Shown here: in pieces, positions 1,202 to 17,421 of the stretch
Numbering within the stretch: the stretch's first letter is position 1
Layout: each line of letters starts with the position of its first letter
From: Styela clava
Taxonomy: Eukaryota
Length of the DNA stretch: 64,000 nt
Assembly (NCBI RefSeq): GCF_964204865.1
Contig: NC_135253.1
Location: 6,262,001 to 6,326,000, forward strand
Reading direction: 5' to 3'
The notes under the pieces: model-generated
Told to the model about the DNA's origin: nothing
The model's database searches: none
The model's input: only the letters and a program-made list of their open reading frames with translations
Program-made: the position numbers and the translations under genes

Positions 1202-4200
1202 GTATTATTGACAGAGGTGATGGCGCAGGCTACGCCAACTTAGATGAAACCAATATTCCAAATCCTTTTTGGGAAGATCATACTTCCCCTATTCCACAAC
1301 AACTTGGGGATCCGAGATGTGGGTATATCGAATTTCCTGGCAATGGAGAATGGAAATCTGGCGCTTGTGGCGCAAGGAGAAAATACATATGTTCCTATGT
1401 GCCAAGTATGTAATGTACTTATTTCAAGTATAGGCATCCTAAAAAATAGAAGCAGGAAAATTCTCTTGATGAAAAGAAAGACAGCCTTGATAGTAAAACT
1501 TATGTTTTTGTTTCAGTGGATATTCAACAGCGAACCGCCGCCAAAAAGCAAATAAGATGTCACGTGTGCCATGGAGAATCTTCAAATCAACGATGTAATG
1601 CCCGAGGAACAGTTTTATGTCCACCAAATGCGGTAAGAAGTGACAAACGAAAGGATATTTTTAGAAAACATTTGATATAAAGTGGATATTTTTATATATG
1701 TTTTCTAAACTTTCAAGCGTTATTGTAAAACAGGGTTCTTGCCAAAACGAGGTACGAGTTGTCAATGGAAAGAAAACAATTACTAAACGATGTAAACAGA
1801 CGAGAGCGTGCATGAATAATTTTCTTCAAAATTCAAAAGCGATGTGGCTCGAGGCTCAATGTAAACCCGGAAAGGGAAAGGGAAGCAGTGTGTGTAGATG
1901 TTGCTGCGAAGGAAACGGATGCAACGCTGAAGAACTGCCTTGTCTAGCAAGTAAGCATTTTAGGGTCAAAAAAGTTACAAAAGGAATATATGGTTTAGTG
2001 CATGAAAGACTGATTAGATCAAACAGTTTTTTTTTTCTGTTGTCTTCCATTTCGTCCATAATGACCTTGACTTACTTTGTTCGCACCGGTTCTATAGAAC
2101 CGTCTCGCGGAATTTTATGAGTTAAGCGAACCGGTTGGCATTAATGGTTACTGTCAATGTTCTGCTTGTAACGCAACCGGCTGAAGAATATGACTTTTGT
2201 GAAGGAACCGGCTGACAAAAAATTTGAATCCCACCACTGGATATATTCGTGATTATGCAATGACCTATTGATAAACTATTTTTGCAGAGGGGTGTGATCC
2301 TATACGAGTTCCAAAAGATGGACGTATAAAATGTACAGATCAGTATATGGTTGGATCCCTGTGTACGTTTTCTTGTGATTTCGGATTTAGCATTCAAGGA
2401 AGTAAAGCAACTCGATGTACAGGAGAAACAGGATGGACATCACCCGTACCTGAATGCATACGTAAGTTTTGGTTGTCTTCGGGATTTTTTACTTTGCGTA
2501 TTTTAATTATTAATTGGGAAATTAAAGCAACAGCTGAGGCATCTAGTGACATTGGGTTTCTTTGACCCAACTTTTCACGTCGTCCGGTTGATGTACTAGA
2601 TTGCATATATATATATATATATATGTTGTCTACTGATTACCTCAAAGTTTTTGATCAAAGTTTGTTCAATTCTGCTCACCTTGTATGTCAGTGTTGATAT
2701 GGTGGATTTAGTGCACCGTATCATGTCATATCTGCTACCAACTAACTAAATCTGTATCTTCTATCTAAATATGTATCTGTATCTGCATATTCTAGTTTCT
2801 TTGTAGTAGCCTATAATCTTTCAATTTCGAAATCAGTTCTTGTTGCCTGACGTTTAACCAACTTACTTAAAACTATACATTTGATGAATGACAAGTTCAA
2901 TCAAATTTTTAATTTCTTGGAAACACTTGAGCACAATCAGTTAGATGCCAAACTGCAATTACTCTTTTTATTAAGGTACGCAGTGTGCACCAATCATGAC
3001 AGCACCCAAAAATGGGAGCGTTGCATGCACTAACATTAATTTTGGTGCATCGACGTGCAGATTTAAATGCGACTACGGATATTATCTCCGAGGACTTTCT
3101 CTAACAACTTGTCTTGGAACTTCTCGATGGAGCGTTGAACGTCCAACCTGCCATTGTGAGTAAACATTTGAAGAATAGAATGGTGAATTTTTTCAGCTGC
3201 TAAATGACAAAAATATTGATTGTATATATAAGAAAATAATCCATTCGTATTTTACCATTCGCTTTTGAAAATCATTTAGAATGTCCCTTGCTTTTAGTGA
3301 TAACGTGCGATAGACCCCTAAAACAGCCAGAGAATGGACGAATTGTCAATCGAAGCCCGGGAATATTTGGTGAAATAACAACATTTGAATGTGTCGAAAA
3401 ATATTTCATGGTTGGAAATCCAGGGATTCGATGCACGGATAGAAATTTAGATGGAATCGGCGAATGGACAAATAAAGAACCAACATGCAGACGTAAGTGC
3501 ATAGATTCTCAGATAATATATACCATTGCAATTTAAAAACTTGGCAACTTGTTTATGTCGAAAAACTATCGATTGAATTGATTGAGAAAAGAACGATCTA
3601 TGTTGTCATGCAATGATTTTGAAAACTAATTAGCTCTGGTTTTACTGTTGTCTTATGAAGATCAATATATTTTGTTTTTACGTAGTTCGGTTTTCAAAAC
3701 ACGCACCGTAATAAATGATGATGAATTGGCCCGTGACGTCATTTCATAAAAATAAATTTGATAGGTTTCATGTTTGACAATTAAGAAAAATGTGCAAACA
3801 GCATGCGATTAAAATAAACGTGGCGAGTTGAGGTTGTTTTCGATATACACTGTCAAAAGTTCTGAAAAAGTTCGGTACTCGGCACTAGGACCGATGTAAT
3901 TCAGTGATGTGAGTTGATTTGAAATTTTGATTGAGAGCATTTGAATGATCAGATAACAGGTTTCTGTGTAGGTCGCATAGGCTATTTTTGTACTGCGTTT
4001 AGTCATTTGACCTTCGCGTCCTTTACTTTGATCATTGCTCTCTTGCTTGTATTCAATCTTTTCCGGGCTTGGCTTTCTCACCAAATATTTCACAGAGAAA
4101 GCGCTAATCGAACTGTGTTGAAAAGTGGTTTACCTGTACCAACGTCGTGTCCCTGTAATGAAGCATTGCTCTCTCATTATTCATAATCTATACGCGTGGC

Positions 4201-7200
4201 GTAAAATAAAGAGATTTGGTTTAAATATTGGAAATTGGCAGTTCTTTGATATTTACAGCTAATAAAGTCTTTTATTTTATCTAGTTATACAATGCTCGGC
4301 TTTAAAAAAGCCGCTAAACGGGAGAGTAAATACAACGACTCAAAACAACGAAGTTGGAACGCTGGCAACATTTAATTGCAATGAGGGGTACTTTCTAGTG
4401 GGCAACCCTACTTTAATTTGTGAAGGTCCTACCAAGATTGGTTTTGGTAAATGGAGCGGAAAAGAGCCTAAATGTGCAGGTTTGTATAAATCATTTTGTC
4501 TTTGTACGTGTTTACTGAGTTTGAATGGGTATAGTTTATTGATCTTCATCGACTCACAGGAGAAAATGTAGACCCTAGGTCAAACGCTTGGATTTCATTG
4601 TACTTCAATTGTATATTTATTGGATTTACTTGTGTACTTCTGATCTGAGGAATGAATATGTTTAAGATTTCGCATTCACATGTTTTTATAGACATCTTTT
4701 TTTTCTCGTTTAAATATGCAATTTGAAAAAAAAAAATAATGTGGCGTTTCATAACAAAATATCCAGTACTTCAGTTTTCAGAAAAAAATCTTTTGTGTGA
4801 ACAATGTTCTTGATGTTATCTTGTTTTTCATCCAGTTATCAAATGCCCAAAAGTGACTGCACCTATCAACGGAGAAGAAATTCAGTCAACAACATCGACA
4901 CCACGGTATGGAACTGTGATCACCTTCACTTGTAAATTTGGATATTTTCGAAATGGGGCTGAAACGTCCATCTGCGTTGATCAAAATGGAGATGGGAAAG
5001 GAGAATGGACGAATAAAGTACCTACATGTAAACGTACGTGAACTAGAACGAACACCTAGATAAAGGTCGCGTCGACCGTTGATTGATTGAGTGACGCGTC
5101 ATCAGTCGCCGCGACCGTACCTAGGTGTCGCTATATAGGTAACCCCGTACACTTGCAAACATTTGTTGTCGCATTGGCATTTGTACAACAGATTAACCAA
5201 GTCAAATCATGTTTTGATTCATCGTTTTAATTTTAAAGCAATTGTACATTTGAAAAAAAGTTGTGCATTTATTTCAACACGATAGCTATTTTTCTTAGAG
5301 ATCGTTTGCCTGCCAAATTTGAAGCCACCAACCAACGGTCGATTTGTCCGGAACGGTGGTTCAGCTTTATCAACGACATCCGAGTTCGCCTGCGATCGGG
5401 GATATTTCCTCTTAGGAACTTCGAGAATTACTTGTCAGGATGAAAACAACGACGGCGCTGGAGAATGGAGCCAAAGTTTGCCAACATGCAGACGTGAGAT
5501 AATTTTTATTTATGCTGCAGAAAATCTGGCGCTTTATTTCTATTGTAATATATTATTTTTTCAGTTAAAATACGTTTTGTTGATTTAAAATTTTGAAGCC
5601 CAGATCTTGGGTATGACAAAGATATTTGATCACATACTTTAATATTACCTAATATCACATACGTTAACGTTACCTAACCAATAAATACATCCGAAACCAG
5701 TTTCAATGAAGTATGATTTTTTTAAATTATTTTTTTAATATGGCCATTTTCATCTCTATCGTTTTCAAAAAAAAATTATAACATCTGGAATTTTTTCTAG
5801 AAATTAAGTGTGAGCCGTTTTTCGGTGTTCCAAGTAATGGTGGAATGATTTGCTCAAAGGAGAATGATTTTGGAACAAATTGTCAGTTTTCGTGTGATAC
5901 CGGATTCTTTTTGTCTGGATCTACATCATCATCATGTGTTGATGACAACGGAGATGGTGTGGGCGAATGGAGAAATCCAGTACCCACTTGTGAACGTAAG
6001 TATTAGCATACCAACATTTTAATTACACTGTTGCCTATGCCTACTATGGTGTTCTAATCAAATGTTCTCTCTACTAAGTCTATACTTGAATATTCGCACC
6101 TCAAACTTTTCTATACAAATACCAGATGAAAAAAAGATGATCAAGTTGTTTATTGCTGATGATTTGATTTATGCAACAAGTCTCGCGCCCCTTTACCGTA
6201 TATCATGTTTAAAAGTACTACTAAACTTCTGTTCAATTTTAGCAATCGTATGCTCTTGGCCACTGAGTCCTTCGGCACATGGAAGTGTTTCGTGCTCGGA
6301 GGAAAATTTGCACGGATCGGAGTGTGAATTTAAATGTGAAGAGGGTTATTGGCTGAAAGACTCTGATCTTCTTGTATGCGAAGGAGACGGCAGCAGAAAA
6401 GATGGAAAATGGTCAAGAAATCCTCCAATCTGTTTTGGTAGGTATTACTATTAGCAATTATATTGCCTGGTTTAAAGAACAGTACAGATGGAATTTATAA
6501 ACAAACTCATATTTTGTTAAGAAATTAACTGTGACAGACCACTCATGCCACCGGAATTCGGATCAGTATCTTGTGACAACAGACAAAAGTTTGGATCAGC
6601 ATGCACATTCTCTTGTGAGACAGGTTACCATCTTGTTGGCGACTCTAAATCTGTTTGTCGTGACGTCGATAATAACGGGAAAGGTGAATGGAGTGGAGAC
6701 AACCCATCTTGTAAAGGTATTTTAACTATTTGAAGAGTTATTTAAAGTTAATTATTATATTCGTTAGCTTTCGTGTTGTACAGCATTCTAATTCAAAGGT
6801 GTTATCATTAAACAGAATCCAGTTGTCGCCCGTCATTTAATGAAATCAAGTTTGGAAAAGTTACCTGTAGTAATGAGAATGGATATGGAAGTTTATGCCA
6901 ATTCCAGTGCAATCCGGGATACAAGTTGAGCGGAGAGGAAACTGTTTCATGCGGCGAACCAAGAACTGAATTACGAGCTACATGGAGCAGCGTTAAACCA
7001 AAATGTGAAGGTGAGAAACGCTTCTTAAATGAAACGTTGAATTACTCAAAACTTAAGCCTCACCGTTTGTTTGTGAGTAAACAAACAACTGTTCAGGATG
7101 CTTGATTATATTATGGATATAACGTAGACATCATAAATCATAGCACTAAGCAACATGCAGTACAGCGAGAGAGAGAAAGAGCGCAACAGTGACATCAAGC

Positions 7201-9710
7201 AACATAAATAAAGTATTACTAATGACGTCATAAATATCATCTTACACCTACTACACATAGCATTAACAACAAATTTATATTACTATATTTCATAAAGTAC
7301 GTCGATGTTCCGAACCGAAAAATCCAGTCGGTGGAAAAGTGATCTGTAGCGATGACTCAGTGCTGGGAAGCGTATGTACGTTCTCATGTGATGCTGACAG
7401 ATATCTCAATGGAAAAGGTAGAAAGACATGCATAACTGAAGATTCCAACCCCGGGTCTGATGTAATTTGGAATGACCCAGATCCTATTTGTCAGAGTAAG
7501 TTGATTGTTTTCATAAAACAACATACTGACACTATAGTTAAACTCTATTTATATCTGCATTTGAGGCTCACCAATAACTTGATATATTTTTGAAAATATT
7601 TAATTTTGCACAAACGTTGAAAACGATTTTTGATCTACATTATAACGTAACATGTAATTAAGCAAAAATGGAGTTATATAAAATAGTATTTTCAAATTCT
7701 ATGTATTTCAAACTGTTGTTGTGACTTAGTGATCACCTGCAAAGAACTGGAGTCAACTTCCGACCTTCTCACTATTAAATGCACCAACTCCCAACTTTCC
7801 CTCGGTACCGTCTGTGCATTTGATTGCAAGGAAGGATATTCATTAGTCGGCAAAGGAGTAACTCAATGTGCAGAACCGACTTCCCGAGATGTAGGAACTT
7901 GGACAAATTCTCTGCCAACTTGTCAACGTAAGAGCATTTTTCGACAGCAAAATATTACAGAAATTAGAATTGTAATACTGAATACATTTGCTAATATATT
8001 TTGTTTTTTCAGGAATAAAATGCCAGCCAGAAAGTTTAAGTCCGTTGAACGGAACTGTGGAATGTACCGATGGAAACTTCTACGGTAGCGTATGTACTTA
8101 TCAATGTGGTTACGGTTATATTTTGATTGGAGAAAGTACTAGAAAATGTCTAGAAGATTCAGCCTGGGACAATTTAGAACCGGAATGCGCGAGTAAGTAG
8201 AAAATTTCTTAAGTTTTAAAATATATGGATTAATTAGTATTTAAGAAGCTATGTTTAATTTTGCTAAATAAATAAATATATATATCTATATTAAGATCGT
8301 GCGATGCTTATTTAATCACAAAATGAAGGCATTAGGTTTATATATATATATCACATTTAAATATATTATTAATGATAACATGCATTTATTTAGCATTGAC
8401 CTGTGACCCCCGCATTGAACCGCCTGAGAATGGAATATCAACTTGTTCCAATGAGAATTACATTGATAGCGTTTGTCAATCATTCTGCAACTTGGGTTAC
8501 AATATGGATGGAGAAATTAATAGTCGATGTGTTATAAAAGACGATGGAACCTTGAAATTTACAAATCCGTCTCCGACCTGCACACGTACGTCATTTTTCC
8601 CCACAGCAGATTTTTCATATTGCATGCCCTTGTGACTGTGGTTGCACCATATTAGTATTGAACAAAATGCCAGTAACTAATCATCTGACTACAATAGAAA
8701 GGCAATAATAGAAGAAAACATGCGTAATTACGCTTACAGATTGCGTTTCAACGTCAACTGACATTCTAAAATGTACCCAACTGAGGCAACTCATAGAATC
8801 GCGAGTCTCGCGCCAATCGGCTCGTAATGGACCATAACTACCATCACCAACGGCATATGTAGTTCCAACAAATCTTGGCCTTCCAGTCGTTGTCTATTCC
8901 TTTGCTTTAAGATAGATATACTTTATTTCTCAACGAGGGCGCGCGACCTTGAATTGTCTGACCTAAGTTTCATAACTTCTGACGGCGCCCTAAGAACAAG
9001 AACAGATACATAAAATAAAAATAAAAAAATAAATAAAAATAAAACGGCGCTCCAGAAGTGTGTGTACCAATATGGAGGTAACTAATTTTGTTCAGAATTG
9101 GAATAAAATTATGGCTTAACCCTAACCTGGTACACACACTACGGGAGTACCCTTCTAACTACCAGCATTGTCTGTCTGTTCATTCAATAATAGTGAAACC
9201 TTCGTTACAGCAATCTATTGTGATGACATTGCCGGCCCAATAGAAGGCGGAAATATACTATGTGGGATCGGACAAGGAAACGTTGAGGGTAACAGATACG
9301 ATACAACTTGTTTCTTATCATGCAGTAATGGGTGGAGAGCTATTGGGTCAACTCGAACAACTTGCCTTGGATTTGGAGAATGGGAAGGCGGTATTGGAAG
9401 ATGCGAAAGTAAGTCAGATCTAACTTTAACGTAACCACGCAGCGATGCTGAAACTTTCAACATCTCGATGATCTTAATTCACATACTTGTTAATTAATAT
9501 TTGTTTATTTATAATTCAGAAATAATCTGCCAACCTCCACTTGGAAAACCACCTAGGGGAGACGTTGCTTGTAACAGACGAGAAAACATACCAGGAACTG
9601 CTTGTACTTTCAAATGTAATCCGGGATTACAACTGGACAGGAATGGAGTAATAACCTGTCAAGATAATGGCCAATGGAGTAGTGAACCTCCTGCTTGCGT
9701 ATCTCCATGA
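1202..9710 (+). CDS. Secreted selectin-like mosaic protein: C-type lectin (C-terminal half) + Ly6/uPAR three-finger domain + 16 CCP/sushi domains; 5' end probably upstream of the window
   Basis: GT-AG exons join in frame. 1202-1405: GIIDRGDG...FW...PRCGYIEFPGNGEWKSGACGARRKYIC (CTLD end). 1517-1632 and 1734-1950: IRCHVC...CRCCCEGNGCN (LU domain). CCP exons, all phase 1: 2288-2461, 2976-3155, 3298-3492, 4285-4479, 4836-5033, 5299-5493, 5801-5995, 6243-6437, 6522-6716, 6816-7010, 7298-7495, 7730-7927, 8013-8192, 8394-8585, 9211-9408, 9520-9710 (stop TGA). AATAAA at about 9948. Confidence 0.9.
9046..9151. mobile_element. Short MITE with ~24-bp terminal inverted repeats (family E)
   Basis: GGCGCTCCAGAAGTGTGTGTACCA ... 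TGGTACACACACTACGGGAGTACC. Related sequence recurs at ~25139-25360, 33663-33772, ~38890-39037, ~49695-49875 and ~52206-52394. Confidence 0.7.
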
Positions 9711-11053: not shown

Positions 11054-11359
11054 TACTAAGTTCTTGGATTGCGCTTGCTACCGCTTACCACACTTGCTAC
11101 CGCATATGAAAATATTAAAGTTTGTAATAATACTTTCATAAGGTTTACTTGCAAACAACAAAAATAACCAGAAAAACGTTATATTTTGCAAAGTAAAAAA
11201 CTTTGACTCAACACTGATAGTTTAACATACACTATTATGAAAGCAAACAAGAAAATATTTGTATCAACAACACGTATAAAACAAAATTTGAAAAACATTT
11301 GTATTATCAAAATTCGCATTTGATCGCAAGGTTATAAACTCTTTATTCTATTACAATTC

Positions 11360-14300
11360 TTAGTTCTCGTCTGGAAACGTTCTTGCATCTTTGTTTATTC
11401 TTGTATAAGATGGTTCGACGGTTTTACTTTGGTCTTCGTATATATACAATTCTATAACACTGGGCACTGACTGCGATCTGAAAACAAAACGATTTAAATA
11501 TATTAACTGACATTCGATAGAGTGTGGAATTCAATGTGCGGGTATTCTAGCGAATGTGGATTGTAACTATATTTCAACACTCGGACGAAAACCGGAAACA
11601 CACGTCATCAAAATTAGTCGATAAGAAGAACGCTATGCACAAGTAATCTAAGGCTTGAAGCTGTCGCGATAAATCATAATCGTGGAAATAGCTAGAATGG
11701 CATATTTCATTGAATTCAACATACTAATAAAAAGTGGTTAAATAACATTGAAGTCCATAGTTACAATCCACATTCGCTACAGTATATATGTATATTAACA
11801 AGGTTGTATCAGATTGTAATGGAATAAAAAGCTCCGAATATTCCATTCGAAAATTAAAAGTGATGATAAAAGTGTTGCTATCAAATAACTAAACGATTAT
11901 TTTATGTGGAAATTCACATTTCAATACGATATCTCTTACGTTACCTTCATTAACGAACTTTTACAACAGTTTTCATACCTCTTTCTACGATTTTTTTCTT
12001 CCTCTACAAATTTTTCAACTTCGCCCTCTTCATCCCTACGTCTGTCTTCTTCTCTTTTGGAAGCACATCGAGTTCCTTCTGATCCGTAACAAGTGCATTC
12101 CATACCAATTCCTTCAAACATGTAGGGCCATCTTTCACATTTTCCGCGAATTGGGCAAGTTGTCATTCCTTTAAAATTACAAACAAGAGAGCAATGCTAA
12201 AATATAATAATATATTTGTCCGTATTATGGACACAATAATCAAATGACCAAAATAGCAACCGCAAAGTAAGCCAATGTTAAAAAGCAGTAGCTTACCGAA
12301 TGTTATAAAGATTTGTACCGAATGTCATAAGATAATGTGCCCATTAATCAGAAATAAAACATTTGGGTTGCAAAGTCAGGTCTCAACGAAATCGAACTTC
12401 TAACCTTCTCCCGTCTCTAAGTACTAGAATTTGACAACAAATTGACATTGCAAAGGCTACAAAACAAACCAATATAACAAATTTTGAAACTCGCGTTCTT
12501 ACTTCTAGCAAAAATTAATAAATCACTAACCCAAAGGGCATGCCGAGCAAGATTGCGAATCATCTTCTTCGCAAGGTATTTTAGTTGGTTCTACTTCATA
12601 CTCCTCTTCCATAAAATTGATTGGAACAGTTTTAACTAAAAAAAATGTAGCATATATGTATATATAATACAAACGATATTTATCAGCAAGGCATTTTCAC
12701 CATTATGCAAACTAGTTATTTTGTTGAAAGTTACTCGTGTTGTCGTGTGACATTTATGTTTTTATCCCCGTGCATTCGAGTTTGTGTTGGCGAGGAGGTA
12801 CAATAATTATCGGCTGATAATAGTATAGTTTATCATGCATATCAGCAAAAATTCGTCTGCTTTTAAAGCGTTCAGTAACGTGGACTCGCGGAAGCTATGT
12901 AGTATCAAAAGAAACTTTTCAAGTTCATAGGCGATCAAATTATCTGCACAAATTTGAAATAACTAATACGCATGTAACTTACTACATTTGCATTGATGTC
13001 TTCCAACTCTTTCCCCAAAACATGTACACTCACATGATGAATCCGTTGTTGTTCGTTCCCAGGTTTCACCAATGGCATACATCATACCAGTCTAAAGAGT
13101 ATTGCTGGGTATAGTTTGAATTAACGCATAAAAGCTAATGAAGGATTTACGAATGATATATCTCGCAACCAGGGAAACAAAAACTTGATAAATTAGCGCA
13201 TTGTTTCGTCTTCTGTTCCACTAATAGTAATTCGGGGTGTGTGATATAGCGCTGAAATATAATATCTATGAAATAATGCAAAATTGGGTTCAAAACATGG
13301 GAATTTTCGTGTTTTTCAATTTTTGAATGGCGATTTCAGACAACATGCCTTCAGCCAACAAAAATGATGGCCCGAAGGCGTTTATACTTTTGTTTTGGTA
13401 TAACGTTGTATGCGTCATAGTAGTCTGGTACAAAACTGAAAAAATATATATATATTCTTATTCTACGCTTTACCGAAATGCAATTTTTCTTCGCCCGCCG
13501 CATTCAATAGAATATCATAGCGATAAACAATGTAAACCTCAGAATTCCTAAGTCTAAAAAATACGGAAAACAATGTCTAAAATCCTATTGTTTGTAAATT
13601 TAAACATTTTTGACTTGCGAATCATTGTTACAATTGGAAAACCAAAAATAGTATGTAATATTGGGTATAATGGACGTTTTCCAGGCCCTACAACCCTGAA
13701 AAAATCTTCCCTATATATACTTTCTCATTGCGAAAAATTTTCAAAGCTGATTTGGAATTTTTTTGGAAAGTTAGCGCTTACAAACTGGCACACATGTTCA
13801 AAACTATCGTTTTTATTCAAAACAATAAACCACGTGCCGGTTATAGGTACTGATAGCTAATTTTAGGCGAGTCTTTCGCAGTTTTTACGTTATCAATTTA
13901 TTATTATTGTAACTGAACTAAAAGCCCTTGAAAGACATAACGACAATTAAGTTATTTGATTCACAACTATTTTTAAAAACACAACTAAAAACTGACGGAC
14001 AACACGGAGAACTACCGAAAAGAGGCAATGTTTACAACCACGCTTGAATATCTGTCTGAGCGAAAGAAGAGTCTGAGCGGCGGCATAAAATCCAATTGTT
14101 ACGTCATTGTTAACTTATTTCTGATTTGTAATTATTACGGAAATAAACAAGGAATTTGATGCTCGGGATGGTCCCAATCGTCATTCGAATGTCCACCCCA
14201 ATAGGGCAAAAATTACACTTGTTCAGATGGTTTATCATCCAGACGGCTAAGCTTCTTGTTTCAATTAAACCAGATTTAAAATAAAACTTTACCTCTTTAT

Positions 14301-15130
14301 CTTGACACTTCTCTCCATCGGGACATATATAAGACCTAGCACAACATTCGTCTGAAACGGGTTCGCATCCAGGTGGATAACTCATTGGAGGACATCTGTA
14401 GCAAAAGTAAATAGTAAAACAGATATAAGCAAAATGGCTATTACGTATTTATGAGCAAACAATATGCCTCATAATAGGACTCGATCATTTATACAGTTCA
14501 GAAATATGAATTATGGGATGAGAGAAATATTAAAAAACCGCTGCCTATACCCTGTTATACACATTGACGTACCTGTGAACACATGCCCCTGTAGGAATCC
14601 AGAGATTTTTAATTTTTCGAATTACACATGTGCATTCAAATTTACATGGCGATCCTTTGAATGTGTGGCCGAACGTTTCCCCTTCTTCGTAGTAGGTTGA
14701 ATTCACGTAGCATTTTTCTGCATCGATTTAACAAATATAATTGAGAATATAAGGATGATTGATGGCAAAATACAATTGAATGTTATCTCACGCTCTGTTC
14801 AAACTAGACTCTCAGTGATCTCCAAAACGATGTAAAAAATTGATCCAAAGTGCAATCGACATATCAAAATAACTGTAACTGTTATTGCGGATAACTGGCT
14901 TTTCAGAAGTATGATTATTAATAATTCAAACGTAGCTTTGTTAAAGTAGGAAATTTCGCATAAAGAATAACCAAAAATGTTATATAAATATATATATTAT
15001 GATTCGTAATCTTTAAATAACTAACTTTAATATAAAATTCATGCTTACTTTGAGCGTCCGATAGCTTCATACAGCACGTTGACAACCAGGTTGAAGAAAA
15101 AGTCAATAACAAAATTGTAAACGGAAACAT
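11360..15130 (-). CDS. Small secreted cysteine-rich protein (~283 aa): signal peptide, VWC domain, FN1-like domain, acidic linker, second Cys-rich module, RRKR site, C-terminal peptide
   Basis: Seven GT-AG exons with matching phases: 15130-15049 (MFPFTILLLTFSSTWLSTCC...), 14717-14573, 14395-14293, 13091-12983, 12635-12531, 12168-11979, 11477-11360. Total 852 nt, in frame. Minus-strand AATAAA at 11342-11347. Confidence 0.8.
11543..11784. mobile_element. MITE with ~28-bp TIRs ending in TA (Tc1/mariner-like)
   Basis: TATTCTAGCGAATGTGGATTGTAACTAT at 11543 and ATAGTTACAATCCACATTCGCTACAGTA ending at 11784 (26/28 inverted match). Lies in the last intron of the VWC-FN1 gene. Confidence 0.75.
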
Positions 15131-17421
15131 ATTCACGCAGCGATTTATAAGATAAATATTTGAAAAACTACAAAGTAGATTAAATTTTGTGTTCTATAGC
15201 AATAGAAAACTTTCTGATAATTATTGAAATGATATTCGTTATTTGAATTATTAGGCTACTATTCACAATCTGATAAGTGACTAACTGCTGTTACCAATCT
15301 TATAAAAAGTACACCATTTTCAGTGTGCTATGTCATCAATCTTTTGTTTTTAAAAACAATGCTTTCATTCTGATGTGAAATATTTATTGTACTGCTCGAG
15401 GTCACGAAGTATTTTGATCGTTAGTTCCACCACGATCATGTGCGATATTATCATAGATTCTGAAAAAACGCTTCCTGCCAATCATACATCATCAAACAAC
15501 AAGTATACGTCATAAGACAAAGATTTCTGAACATGATAATAAAGCGTCGGGATTTTGAAGTAGTTAAATACGGGAAGAAAAATCACTTTATCTGAAATTT
15601 TTCTGTTGAATCGGTCGTTTAAATTAATTGCTCAGTTTAATCATTCCCATTCCCTCAGCGTAAATAGTATAACACGTTTTAATATATATATATATGATAG
15701 TTCTATATTTGCCGTTTGAATTTTTTCGAATATATATATCAGTTTTATTTAATCAACTATATTGGTATATGTATATATATATATAACAGTTTATTGAAGT
15801 CAAAAAAATCGCTGACTAATAGCATTCATTATAGAAATATCGCTTCCCTTACCTTGTCTAGAAGAAACAATTCCGCAAGCAATCCCAACTCGAATGCTTG
15901 TGCCTTTCAGTTTTGTACTTTTTATGGCAGTCCGATATCCAAAAACATATATCATTGCTCTTATTATCAATCATTGCCAATATTTAAAAATATATATATA
16001 TCATGCATCAACGCGACAATGATTTTAGCAATGCGTGAAGTATAAACATACTGCTTTCGCTGACGGGTTTAATGAGAAGTCGTGAAATTTATTTTCCTAG
16101 ATAGCTTACGAAGCGATAAATTAACCTTCTGTTTAAGTCACTTAAATTGACTGTCAAGTAAATCCTTAAATTAGAAATCGTGGAGAAGTCAAATTTTGTT
16201 AGCTAAGCAATTAAACTTTATTGAACTTCATTACTGATCATCGATTCATAATCAGCTGTTGAAGCTTACCAAATTGAAAACGGCATTGTAAAACATGAGT
16301 GATATTTTCACTTATTCTTGAAAAATACGGTGGAAGTAAGGCGGATTTAAATTTTGATCAATTATTATCAGTACCCTTGGGATGAGTCACACCAATGAAA
16401 GAGTTTCTCCTGTTTTATATAGATGTGAATGGAGTTTTATTTTAGTATTAGAAACAATCCAAATCCGAAGCGACAGTTGAACATGATAGCCTACATTGAA
16501 CAAATAAAGTTTATTTATTGTGCCTCATTCAGGAGTCAAATTTTGGTATTTATTTTAATTTTACACCAACTATACATATTTATAGTAGGCCTACATGTCG
16601 ATGTAATACTGAGTGATTAAAGTGTGGATTAAATAAGATAATAACGCCAGTCGTAAAATGGCAAAAATCAACAAAAATAAAAAGATTTTCCACCTGTACC
16701 ACATAGGCTACTGAGTATCAATGCTATTGATTACACTACGTGGGCTCAATAGCTAAATTCATATTGATATACAGTACCTTGACTGGCAGTGGGCGAAGAC
16801 CGCTATATCGGCTTTCGTAGATTTTCAAGAATGTGGATTTCGGAAGTAGCCTAATTCAGAAGAAAGTAAATTAGATATTAAAATGATTTAAAAATATTAT
16901 TCATCAGTTTTTTCAGACATCTGTTAGTGTCGAAATTTCTGTTTCTATAAATTATATTGCCTTTGTTTCAAATACACAACCACATAAACTGAAGTTCAAT
17001 CGTAATATTTCTGTTCACTATATCTTTACATACTGTATTCATTTAATTTTCTTTACCTTTTCGGTAAATTTTTAAATGAGAAATAACTGATTGATATGTG
17101 TTTTTGTGCTCACGCAGCCTTATTTGCTTGTTTCGTCTTTCTCCCTAAAAATCAAATGAATGTGAAAACCCCTTTACTTGTGAACAGGTGTGCAATGACT
17201 TGCTATGATCAAACGAATATCGAAGGAATTGCGCGAAAGAACTGGCGGGTACAATCGGTACTCACGTGGGCAGATAAAGTCAAAATAATAGATTTCATAG
17301 GAATCGACAGCGTGCGTTCTCGCGACGGGAAAACCAGCGCTTCACAAAGCTGCAAAGGCTGATACAACAGCAGATAATACAGTAATAAAAAGACCTTGTT
17401 CGTTCTATTTACTGATTCAAA

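What the first reader, a model, noticed from the sequence alone, without database searches (positions are those of the whole stretch)
11360..15130. Hidden small secreted protein joining a CCN-type VWC domain to a fibronectin type I-like domain
Seen: after a signal peptide comes CYVNSTYYEEGETF...PCKFECTC...GACVHRCPP...PGC...ECCARSYIC (VWC). Next is CQDKE|TGMMYAIGETWERTTTDSSCECTCFGERVGRHQCKC, matching the FN1 pattern C.D..TG..Y..G.TW.R....CTC.G...GR..C with two extra Cys. A further module has W...GMECTCYGSEGTRC. Known: FN1 is a rare, essentially chordate domain (fibronectin, tPA, factor XII, HGFA) that structurally resembles the VWC N-subdomain. Inference: a non-fibronectin FN1-like protein with VWC-like extra cysteines could bear on the origin of FN1, and may bind growth factors or matrix.
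Basis: partly seen in the sequence, partly recalled or inferred. Interest (0 to 1): 0.75.

Follow-up and report, generated by a model that had tools for sequence, protein, structure and literature searches.

The report
Sea-squirt secreted protein with FN1 domain
A sea-squirt gene encodes a small secreted, cysteine-rich protein that carries a fibronectin type I module outside fibronectin itself; it is real, expressed and conserved among sea squirts, but it is already annotated and its function is unknown.

Summary
A 7-exon minus-strand gene (15130..11360) encodes 283 aa. All six predicted junctions, including 14293/13091, appear in spliced contigs of public runs.

Exon 4 alone passes Pfam fn1 (34.6 bits, cut-off 27). 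The full protein scores 37.4 bits over the whole profile. Sequence and fold searches of PDB return fibronectin, factor XII and tPA F1 modules.

The two extra cysteines are real. They are invariant in 5 of 5 orthologues and are present in a tandem paralogue 33 kb away.

The "VWC" label is only partly supported. The module has ten Cys and a CCN-like C2xxxC3xC4 spacing, but it is sub-threshold in Pfam (16.9 bits; 0 of 5 full-length proteins).

The gene is not hidden. It is Styela clava XP_039248458.2, first auto-named "fibronectin-like". Relatives were found only in ascidians: Ciona intestinalis, C. savignyi, Clavelina lepadiformis and one unnamed record.

A third module resembles the C-terminal part of FN1, and a furin-type site follows it in 5 of 5 orthologues.

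Function is inferred only: a secreted matrix or growth-factor adaptor. The scan had not found this before on other DNA. I rate it a new variant of a known kind, of moderate interest.

The parts
15050..15130 (-). Exon 1 coding part: start codon at 15130 and the hydrophobic N-terminus (residues 1-27), a presumed signal peptide
   Evidence: Translation. Best 12-mer hydrophobicity is 1.87 at residue 1, and no later TM-like 19-mer scores above 1.0. An in-frame stop lies 22 codons upstream.
14573..14717 (-). Exon 2: N-terminal half of the 10-Cys VWC-like module (Cys 30, 52, 56, 58, 73), an FN1/VWC-SD1-type beta unit
   Evidence: Pfam VWC 16.9 bits, below cut-off, profile 1-30 of 57. In the Ciona orthologue model the equivalent residues 24-67 align to fibronectin 8FnI (Z 5.7, rmsd 1.1 A over 43) and to VWF C4 (Z 4.4). 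The junction is seen.
14308..14395 (-). Exon 3, first part: C-terminal half of the VWC-like module (Cys 77, 86, 93, 94, 100)
   Evidence: All five Cys are invariant in 5 of 5 orthologues. CCN3 VWC aligns over Ciona model residues 22-93 with Z 3.1, 62 aligned. Coordinates were checked.
14293..14307 (-). Last five codons of exon 3 (CQDKE): first Cys and start of the FN1 domain, followed by a phase-0 intron inside the domain
   Evidence: Pfam fn1 on P0001 covers residues 106-144, profile 1-40 of 40. The 14293/13091 junction is in 4 of 4 runs.
12984..13091 (-). Exon 4: remainder of the FN1 domain (residues 111-146), with canonical Cys 132, 134, 144 and extra Cys 130, 146
   Evidence: fn1 34.6 bits, E 2.1e-8. 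PDB fibronectin F1 modules reach E 1.5e-9. Model residues 102-149 align to 9FnI with Z 6.5, rmsd 1.6 A over 48, 35% identity.
12531..12635 (-). Exon 5: variable linker, then the first three Cys (168, 176, 179) of the 8-Cys third module
   Evidence: Linker mean pairwise identity is 0.18 and the Cys are invariant. Pfam finds nothing.
12065..12168 (-). Exon 6, first part: rest of the third module (Cys 186, 192, 206, 208, 216; W195; CTCYG), which is like the C-terminal part of FN1
   Evidence: The only PDB sequence hit is fibronectin 1F1, E 0.048, 17.3 bits. hhalign against the family's FN1 gives P 0.011, which is weak. Three strands are predicted at low pLDDT.
11979..12064 (-). Exon 6, second part: charged Glu/Arg/Lys linker ending in the furin-type site RRKR (residues 242-245; the last Arg codon is split by the intron and completed at 11477)
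   Evidence: An R-x-[KR]-R motif sits at the equivalent place in 5 of 5 orthologues.
11360..11477 (-). Exon 7: 38-residue acidic, Tyr-containing C-terminal tail and the TAA stop (11362-11360)
   Evidence: Translation is. Tail mean pairwise identity is 0.21. Contigs cover 11200-11479.

Best explanation
SHOWN
- This is an expressed, correctly spliced, already annotated Styela clava gene (LOC120326264, 283 aa).
- It belongs to a small family found here only in ascidians.
- The protein has an N-terminal hydrophobic leader and no membrane segment.
- It has three conserved disulfide-rich modules, separated by fast-evolving linkers:
  1. A 10-Cys VWC-like module whose first half has the FN1/VWC-SD1 fold.
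  2. A bona fide fibronectin type I domain with an extra, invariant Cys pair.
  3. An 8-Cys module whose second half resembles the C-terminal sheet of FN1.
- A conserved R-x-[KR]-R site follows, then a poorly conserved tail.

INFERRED
- The protein is secreted and all 24 mature Cys are paired. The extra pair (Cys130, Cys146) would form a third, cross-strand disulfide beside the canonical C2-C4 bond.
- A furin-type convertase removes the tail.
- The mature protein of about 25 kDa acts as an extracellular adaptor. Its FN1-type modules would bind extended peptide segments of matrix proteins by beta-strand addition, as fibronectin F1 modules do. Its VWC-like module may bind a BMP/TGF-beta-type ligand, as in chordin/CCN-type proteins.
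- The identity and architecture part is near certain. The binding mechanism is a best guess.
For: Gene model and expression
- Six of six junctions appear in spliced contigs.
- The seven exon pieces are collinear with P0001, with only split codons between them.
- P0001 is XP_039248458.2, on a contig of 25,446,714 bases, the same length as G000:C4.

FN1 domain
- Pfam fn1 37.4 bits (cut-off 27) over profile 1-40 of 40. fn1 is found in 5 of 5 orthologues.
- With exon 4, all 11 PDB sequence hits are fibronectin.
- With the family profile, 8 of 11 hits are fibronectin, best E 5.1e-10.
- The 14 Foldseek hits at E<=0.001 are all entries containing fibronectin F1 modules.
- VIA gives Z 6.5, rmsd 1.6 A over 48 residues against 9FnI; factor XII FnI rmsd 1.3 A over 42; tPA finger Z 4.8.

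Conservation
- All 24 mature Cys are invariant in 5 of 5 orthologues.
- Modules show 50-57% mean pairwise identity; linkers and tail show 18-21%.
- A tandem paralogue has the same modules and the same intron phases.
- Six of 10 coding variants seen in RNA contigs are synonymous, and none touches a Cys.
- The 8 differences from the earlier RefSeq version all lie outside residues 28-146.

Other features
- A furin-type site is present in 5 of 5 orthologues.
- VWC-like: ten Cys, C2xxxC3xC4 spacing, and VWC structures among the weaker fold matches.
- The nearest language-model clusters are NELL2, VWC2L, Brorin, chordin-like 2 and WISP3, at scores 0.75-0.84. These are leads only.
Against: - No binding, secretion or cleavage was tested.
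- Both AF2 models are of low confidence (mean pLDDT 47.1 and 53.4).
- VIA Z values of 5-6.5 lie in the range the tool itself calls 'middling', although small domains cannot score much higher.
- Pfam VWC is not met.
- The CCN3 VWC sequence hit is not significant (E 5.9).
- Atlas scores are below 0.9, a level reached often by shuffled proteins.
- The runs' kind 'RNA' is a guess by the tool.
- The tail after the furin-type site is short and different in the two Ciona proteins.
- The only published data on an orthologue are qPCR changes after zymosan (PMC10433773, passages read). These do not speak to mechanism.
Confidence: 0.6

Rival explanations
1. The central domain is not a true FN1 but a VWC cut down to its first subdomain. 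On this view the family is a three-module VWC-type BMP antagonist of the Brorin/chordin-like kind, and the fn1 score reflects only the known likeness of VWC subdomain 1 and FN1.
For: - An extra Cys sits just before the CxC motif, where VWC has its C2.
- Exon 4 gives a weak PF23333 VWC2L_1st match, 15.6 bits, E 0.015.
- The nearest Atlas clusters are NELL2, VWC2L, Brorin and chordin-like 2, at 0.75-0.84.
- hhalign of the family's FN1 against its own N-terminal subdomain gives P 0.002.
Against: - fn1 is above cut-off in 5 of 5 orthologues, while VWC is found in 0 of 5.
- All significant PDB sequence hits are F1 modules.
- The TG..Y..G..W and CxC..G motifs align with F1 modules at 35-40% identity.
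- This locus is absent from the genome-wide matches to VWC2L_1st (8), VWC2L_2nd (12) and VWC (82).
- A separate Brorin-like candidate lies on C13.
Confidence: 0.2
2. The gene is a recent derivative of the tunicate fibronectin-like gene. An F1 exon was shuffled into a VWC protein, so it says nothing about the origin of FN1.
For: - Sources auto-name it 'fibronectin-like'.
- Identity to human 8-9FnI and 2-3F1 is 35-40% in fold alignments.
- Ciona fibronectin has six FN1 modules (PMC5006582, passages read).
Against: - The domain is split by a phase-0 intron after its first five residues. Only the VWC-like+FN1 block as a whole is bounded by phase-1 introns.
- The paralogue has the same layout.
- The six-Cys form is invariant across three ascidian orders, so the family is old.
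- The other FN1-like exons in this genome score lower (22.9 and 21.1 bits) and have four Cys.
Confidence: 0.1
3. The protein is mainly a precursor. The conserved furin-type site releases a C-terminal peptide that is the active product.
For: - An R-x-[KR]-R site is present in 5 of 5 orthologues, and apparently in the paralogue too.
- The tail shows some likeness between Styela, the unnamed relative and Clavelina.
Against: - Tail mean pairwise identity is only 0.21, against 0.50-0.57 for the modules. The tail is short and unlike in both Ciona proteins.
- Selection clearly acts on the Cys-rich modules.
Confidence: 0.1
4. The reading frame is a chance or dead feature, that is, a pseudogene or a mis-prediction.
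For: None was found. Low-depth contigs inside introns show only unspliced RNA or DNA in the runs.
Against: - Spliced contigs come from two studies.
- The frame is intact.
- Orthologues exist in four named species.
- All Cys are invariant.
Confidence: 0.01

Closest known systems
Fibronectin type I (F1, 'finger') modules of fibronectin, tPA, factor XII (Pfam PF00039)
   Same: - The score is above the curated cut-off.
- The four canonical Cys, the TG..Y..G..W core and the CxC..G motif all align.
- The predicted fold superposes at 1.3-1.6 A over 42-48 residues.
   Different: - There are two further invariant Cys: two residues before the CxC motif and two after the last Cys.
- The domain is split by a phase-0 intron rather than lying on its own exon.
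- It sits in a 283-aa protein with no FN2, FN3, EGF, kringle or protease domains.
VWC / chordin-like cysteine-rich repeat, CCN subtype (Pfam PF00093; CCN3 VWC, PDB 5nb8)
   Same: - There are ten Cys.
- The C2xxxC3xC4 spacing is the one described for CCN proteins (PMC2683937).
- The two-subdomain layout has an FN1-like first half.
- CCN3, collagen IIA, VWF C4 and NEL VWC structures appear among the fold matches at Z 2.6-4.4.
   Different: - Pfam gives 16.9 bits, below the 27.6 cut-off, and for exon 2 only.
- Full-length scans find VWC in 0 of 5 orthologues.
- C8C9 is followed by five residues in Styela and is split as CxC in Ciona and Clavelina.
- There are no IGFBP, TSP1 or CT modules, so it is not a CCN protein.
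Tunicate fibronectin-like protein (Ci-FN; PMC5006582)
   Same: It contains FN1 modules, occurs in ascidians and is secreted.
   Different: Ci-FN has 3698 aa with 6 FN1, 2 FN2, 29 FN3 and 3 Ig modules (passages read). This protein has 283 aa and only fn1 by Pfam.
Brorin / VWC2 and VWC2L (small secreted VWC-only BMP antagonists)
   Same: It has a similar size and a similar layout of two or three Cys-rich modules behind a signal peptide. These are among the nearest Atlas clusters, at 0.79-0.81.
   Different: PF23333 gives 15.6 bits (cut-off 27) and PF23334 gives nothing. This locus is not among the genome-wide matches. A separate candidate lies at C13:8480589-8481318.

Membership tests
FN1 domain (Pfam PF00039) | Profile score at or above the curated gathering cut-off (27 bits) | tested here: met
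   Exon 4 alone scores 34.6 bits. The full protein scores 37.4 bits over profile 1-40 of 40. Five of 5 orthologues match.
FN1 domain (Pfam PF00039) | Four canonical cysteines with the CxC pair, and the aromatic/Gly core (Y..G..W) | tested here: met
   Cys106, 132, 134 and 144, plus Y115, G118 and W121, align with fibronectin F1 modules. The Cys, G118 and W121 are invariant in 5 of 5. Y115 is not invariant: it is His in the C. savignyi protein.
FN1 domain (Pfam PF00039) | Two-sheet finger fold | tested here: met
   Against 9FnI: Z 6.5, rmsd 1.6 A over 48. Against factor XII FnI: rmsd 1.3 A over 42. Caveat: domain pLDDT is about 60-68 in a low-confidence model.
FN1 domain (Pfam PF00039) | 1-3 / 2-4 disulfide connectivity | not testable with these tools
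   No coordinates or chemistry were available. The extra pair, Cys130 and Cys146, is inferred to form a third bond.
FN1 domain (Pfam PF00039) | Module on its own symmetric phase 1-1 exon (typical of vertebrate F1 modules; recalled, from no call) | tested here: not met
   A phase-0 intron follows residue 110, inside the domain. Phase-1 introns bound exons 2-4 as a block.
VWC (Pfam PF00093) | Profile score at or above the cut-off (27.6 bits) | tested here: not met
   Exon 2 scores 16.9 bits. Zero of 5 full-length proteins match. This locus is not among 82 genome-wide matches.
VWC (Pfam PF00093) | Ten Cys with C2xxC3xC4 and C8C9xxC10 motifs (CCN type: one and two extra residues; PMC2683937) | tested here: inconclusive
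   There are ten invariant Cys, and C2xxxC3xC4 is present in 5 of 5. C8C9 is followed by five residues in Styela and in the unnamed relative. It reads C8xC9 in the other three.
VWC (Pfam PF00093) | Two-subdomain VWC fold | tested here: inconclusive
   CCN3 VWC: Z 3.1, 62 aligned. Collagen IIA VWC: Z 2.9, 67 aligned. VWF C4: Z 4.4. The first subdomain fits F1 modules better: Z 5.7, rmsd 1.1 A.
CCN proteins | IGFBP-VWC-TSP1-CT four-module architecture | tested here: not met
   Pfam finds only fn1 in P0001 at E<=10.
Fibronectin / tunicate fibronectin-like protein | Arrays of FN1, FN2 and FN3 modules | tested here: not met
   Only fn1 is found, in 283 aa. None of the 19 genome-wide FN2 matches lies near this locus.
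Brorin / VWC2 / VWC2L | PF23333 and PF23334 domains above cut-off | tested here: not met
   PF23333 scores 15.6 bits on exon 4 only. This locus is absent from the genome-wide lists.

The most novel reading that the evidence does not exclude
The family preserves a form intermediate between VWC and FN1. Its finger domain sits directly behind a VWC-like module. It keeps a Cys at the VWC 'C2' side of the CxC motif, but pairs it within the domain instead of with a second subdomain. If so, FN1 arose from a VWC first subdomain in small secreted VWC-type proteins of the tunicate/vertebrate ancestor, and was only later recruited into fibronectin and the clotting proteases.
Probability: 0.12. Interest if true: 0.7.

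Novelty: new variant of a known kind. Interest (0 to 1): 0.4.

Why it matters
FN1 is described as a chordate-specific domain (PMC3308698, passages read). In tunicates it has been discussed only as part of the giant fibronectin-like protein (PMC5006582 and PMC4422808, passages read).

This family shows that ascidians also keep a small, conserved, non-fibronectin protein with FN1. Its FN1 is the best-scoring one in the Styela genome. It carries a third conserved Cys pair and lies next to a VWC-like module.

That gives matrix-evolution researchers a compact, testable case for how finger and VWC modules are related. It also gives Ciona biologists a tractable candidate extracellular adaptor.

The family is not a discovery of a new kind of system. 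The gene models are public, and one paper has already measured the Ciona gene's mRNA.

Tried and rejected
What I tried and what came of it:

1. Exon-by-exon Pfam. Five of the 7 pieces gave nothing useful. Exon 7's Beta-ketacyl_N match (E 0.14) is taken as chance.

2. Exon 2 against PDB. The only hits were chance-level matches to HIV gp120 (E 0.4-1.2). I rejected them.

3. Whole-library HMMER with exon 6. It found only the protein itself, so this module shows no detectable relatives at E<=0.001.

4. Word-indexed searches.
   - The single-protein search found 4 proteins among 88 candidates.
   - The profile search found 5 among 630.
   - The FN1-region search found only the query itself, from 1 candidate, so it was uninformative.
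   - All three see only proteins of about 156-495 aa. Longer or shorter kin, and non-ascidian genomes, remain untested.

5. Two AF2 models. The third module and the tail stayed below pLDDT 50, so no fold claim is made for them.

6. Internal hhalign. Only weak P values (0.002-0.011) against controls of 0.12-0.42. Common origin of the three modules is not established.

7. Atlas. All scores were below 0.9, so these are leads only.

8. Brorin/VWC2L membership is rejected.

9. Literature. Searches found no domain-level description of this family.
   - The only mention is PMC10433773 (passages read). It lists the Ciona orthologue as 'FN-like' and groups it with Ig-domain proteins, which Pfam does not support here.
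   - Its supplementary figures hold part of the qPCR data.

10. I did not establish what the other FN1-like exons (L003, L004) belong to, nor where the Styela fibronectin orthologue lies.

Full report
**What is there**

On the minus strand between 15130 and 11360 lies a seven-exon gene: 15130-15049, 14717-14573, 14395-14293, 13091-12983, 12635-12531, 12168-11979 and 11477-11360. Every intron has GT..AG borders and the coding length is 852 nt, or 283 codons with TAA at 11362-11360. Intron phases are 1, 2, 0, 1, 1, 2.

**Expression and splicing**

One run search listed 12 runs. Five runs of two studies, with kind guessed as RNA, held 14-28% of the sampled words. That is about the exonic share of the 4.1-kb stretch.

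Laying four of them (X1, X2, X3, X5; contigs, not reads) showed spliced contigs for all six junctions:
- 13091/14293: 4 of 4 runs
- 14395/14573: 4 of 4
- 12635/12983: 4 of 4
- 12167/12530: 4 of 4
- 14717/15049: 3 of 4
- 11477/11979: 1 of 4, with loose ends at 11479 and 11979 in the other three that fit the same joint

All skipped stretches end CT..AC on the plus strand. Three further runs with the same species label held next to none of the words, so expression may be tissue- or stage-limited. That is not shown, and contig depth cannot be used as a level.

**Identity of the gene**

I searched exon by exon and did not join exons myself. Exon 6 against 1.84 billion representatives gave one protein at E<=0.001, P0001. 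Its 283 residues contain the seven exon translations in order, with only the split codons between them.

P0001 is XP_039248458.2, 'uncharacterized protein LOC120326264 [Styela clava]'. Its earlier version was named 'fibronectin-like'. It sits on a contig of 25,446,714 bases, the length of G000:C4. So the genome is Styela clava, as earlier notes of the scan had said, and the gene is not hidden.

**Domains**

*The FN1 domain.* Pfam on the seven exon pieces gave fn1 for exon 4 alone: 34.6 bits, cut-off 27, E 2.1e-8, profile 6-40 of 40. It gave a sub-threshold VWC match for exon 2: 16.9 against 27.6 bits, profile 1-30 of 57. On P0001, fn1 scores 37.4 bits over residues 106-144 and the whole profile. 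No other family appears at E<=10.

In a six-frame scan of the whole genome, this exon is the only one of 12 scored candidates above the fn1 cut-off.

Against PDB sequences, exon 4 hits 11 sequences, all fibronectin (best E 1.5e-9). The family profile hits 8 fibronectin sequences (best E 5.1e-10), followed by three insignificant ones. Among those three is the CCN3 VWC domain at E 5.9.

*Fold evidence.* The AF2 model of P0001 is poor overall (mean pLDDT 47.1) but reaches about 60-70 in the first two modules.
- Foldseek's 14 hits at E<=0.001 are all entries with fibronectin F1 modules.
- VIA-align puts residues 102-149 on 9FnI at Z 6.5, rmsd 1.6 A over 48 residues, 35% identity.
- It puts them on factor XII FnI at rmsd 1.3 A over 42, and on the tPA finger at Z 4.8.
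- The tool warns that Z below 8 can be a common arrangement. For a 45-residue domain, and together with the sequence scores, I take the FN1 assignment as sound.

*The first module.* It has ten Cys (30, 52, 56, 58, 73, 77, 86, 93, 94, 100). Its C2xxxC3xC4 spacing is the one a review gives for CCN proteins. Generic VWC has C2xxC3xC4 and C8C9xxC10, and CCN has one and two extra residues (PMC2683937, passages read).

The C8C9-to-C10 spacing is five residues in Styela. The pair is split as CxC in Ciona and Clavelina.

Pfam VWC is found in 0 of 5 full-length orthologues. This locus is not among 82 genome-wide VWC matches.

In the better model, that of the Ciona orthologue (mean pLDDT 53.4; 66-81 over this module), an all-against-48,161-chain search gave these results:
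- Residues 24-67 fall on fibronectin 8FnI: Z 5.7, rmsd 1.1 A over 43, 33% identity.
- VWF C4 follows at Z 4.4.
- CCN3 VWC scores Z 3.1 and collagen IIA VWC Z 2.9, each over the whole module (62 and 67 aligned).

I therefore call it VWC-like: a finger-type first half plus a five-Cys second half. I do not file it as a Pfam VWC.

*The third module.* It has Cys 168, 176, 179, 186, 192, 206, 208 and 216. It has no Pfam match. Its only PDB sequence hit is fibronectin 1F1 at E 0.048. That hit aligns the W, the CTCYG motif and the last Cys.

Both models predict three strands there, at pLDDT below 50. It looks like the C-terminal sheet of a finger behind a different Cys-rich start. This is a lead, not a result.

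Internal profile comparisons are weak. The family's FN1 against its own first subdomain gives P 0.002. Against the third module it gives 0.011. Controls give 0.12 and 0.42.

**Family and conservation**

The word-indexed searches found these relatives:
- P0002, unnamed source, 50% identity
- Ciona intestinalis F6TWX3 / XP_026692032.1, 'fibronectin-like'
- C. savignyi H2Z8E9
- Clavelina lepadiformis XP_076802832.1, plus two further near-identical loci

These were 4 of 88 and 5 of 630 candidates. Nothing outside ascidians passed. However, only proteins of about 156-495 aa were eligible, and no eukaryote genome other than this one could be scanned.

All 24 Cys of the mature protein are invariant in 5 of 5. 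That includes the extra pair of the finger domain, Cys130 and Cys146.

Mean pairwise identity is 0.52, 0.57 and 0.50 in the three modules. It is 0.18-0.21 in the linkers and the tail.

All five proteins have a hydrophobic N-terminus, no later membrane-type segment, no RGD, and an R-x-[KR]-R site after the third module.

Ten coding variants were seen in the RNA contigs. Six are synonymous and none touches a Cys. The eight differences from the earlier RefSeq version all lie after residue 146.

One Clavelina isoform and one deposited model lack 12 residues holding the last two finger Cys. I left them out of the alignments used for folding.

**A paralogue**

About 33 kb away, outside the window on the same strand (G000:C4, about 6240280-6243953; locus L009), lie exons matching several of this gene's exons:
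- exon 2: 36% identity
- exon 3: 47%
- exon 4: 44%, fn1 23.7 bits
- exon 6: 48%

The paralogue also has an exon-5-like Cys triplet, a plausible leader exon, the same intron phases, the same CxCxC...CxC pattern and an apparent R-S-K-R site. I could not test its expression.

**Mechanism**

Shown: the architecture, its conservation, and splicing.

Inferred:
- secretion;
- full disulfide pairing, with a third cross-strand bond in the finger domain. The extra Cys lie two residues outside the two partners of the canonical second bond, on neighbouring strands. No coordinates were available to check this;
- convertase cleavage before the tail;
- a role as an extracellular adaptor.

F1 modules of fibronectin bind extended peptides by strand addition, as the PDB entries matched here illustrate (collagen peptide on 8-9FnI, bacterial peptides on 2-5F1; titles). 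VWC repeats commonly bind BMP/TGF-beta ligands (PMC2683937). Hence my best guess is a matrix-tethered ligand modulator.

The only published data on an orthologue are qPCR measurements in Ciona juveniles. 'FN-like' was down after 4 h of 10 ug/ml zymosan (PMC10433773, passages read). That paper groups the protein with Ig-domain proteins, which Pfam does not support. Part of its data is in supplements that I could not open.

**Comparison with known families**

- It is a member of the FN1 domain family, by score, motifs and fold.
- It is not fibronectin: it has no FN2 or FN3, and none of the 19 FN2 matches in the genome is near.
- It is not a CCN protein: it has no IGFBP, TSP1 or CT module.
- It is not Brorin/VWC2L. 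A separate candidate for that lies on C13.
- It differs from described F1 modules by the third Cys pair. It also differs by its gene structure: a phase-0 intron lies inside the domain, and only exons 2-4 together are bounded by phase-1 introns. That vertebrate F1 modules lie on single phase 1-1 exons is recalled, not tested.

**Novelty and verdict**

FN1 is called chordate-specific (PMC3308698). Tunicate FN1 has been discussed for the fibronectin-like protein (PMC5006582, PMC4422808). Seven searches found no domain-level account of this small family. The models are public and auto-named, so this is not a new gene.

I rate it a new variant of a known kind, interest 0.4. The boldest reading not excluded is that the family preserves a step between VWC and FN1. 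I put that at about 0.12.

Noticed in passing
outside the window: G000:C4:6240280-6243953, minus strand (locus L009, about 3298-6953): A tandem paralogue lies about 33 kb from the gene. It has the same three Cys-rich modules, the same intron phases, a plausible leader exon and an apparent R-S-K-R site. Its FN1 exon scores 23.7 bits, below cut-off.
   Followed up: partly
G000:C10:12167247-12167366 (L003) and G000:C17:10177137-10177244 (L004): Two further four-Cys FN1-like exons score below the Pfam cut-off (22.9 and 21.1 bits). I did not work out which genes they belong to. One may be the single FN1 exon noted earlier in the scan (s1-809924).
   Followed up: no
G000:C17:7982504-7983264 and 7992679-7993398: There are two triplets of strong FN2 domains (65-76 bits), 10 kb apart. 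None of the 19 FN2 matches in the genome lies near an FN1 match, so a Styela fibronectin orthologue was not evident from these scans.
   Followed up: no
G000:C13:8480589-8481318: Sub-threshold VWC2L_1st (22.6 bits), VWC2L_2nd (22.6 bits) and VWC (26.8 bits) matches lie within 700 bases. This is a candidate Brorin/VWC2-like gene, separate from the family studied here.
   Followed up: no
window 13940-14320 (intron 3): Short contigs with loose ends at 14046-14168 appear here, and one run shows depth 88 at 13940-14076. This suggests a repeated or separately transcribed element inside intron 3.
   Followed up: no
window 15131-15300 and beyond: One spliced contig (1117 letters) continues 341 letters past 15300 on the 5' side. 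That implies either a 5' UTR of over 500 nt with twelve upstream ATGs, or a merge with a neighbouring transcript. An in-frame stop lies 22 codons before the start codon.
   Followed up: partly
proteins P0009 and P0010 (Clavelina lepadiformis): One predicted isoform and one deposited model lack 12 residues holding the last strand and last two Cys of the FN1 domain. This is either an alternative donor or a prediction artefact.
   Followed up: no
window 1202-9710: Earlier first-reader notes describe a sushi-rich, selectin-like gene just downstream of this gene on the window. I did not examine it.
   Followed up: no
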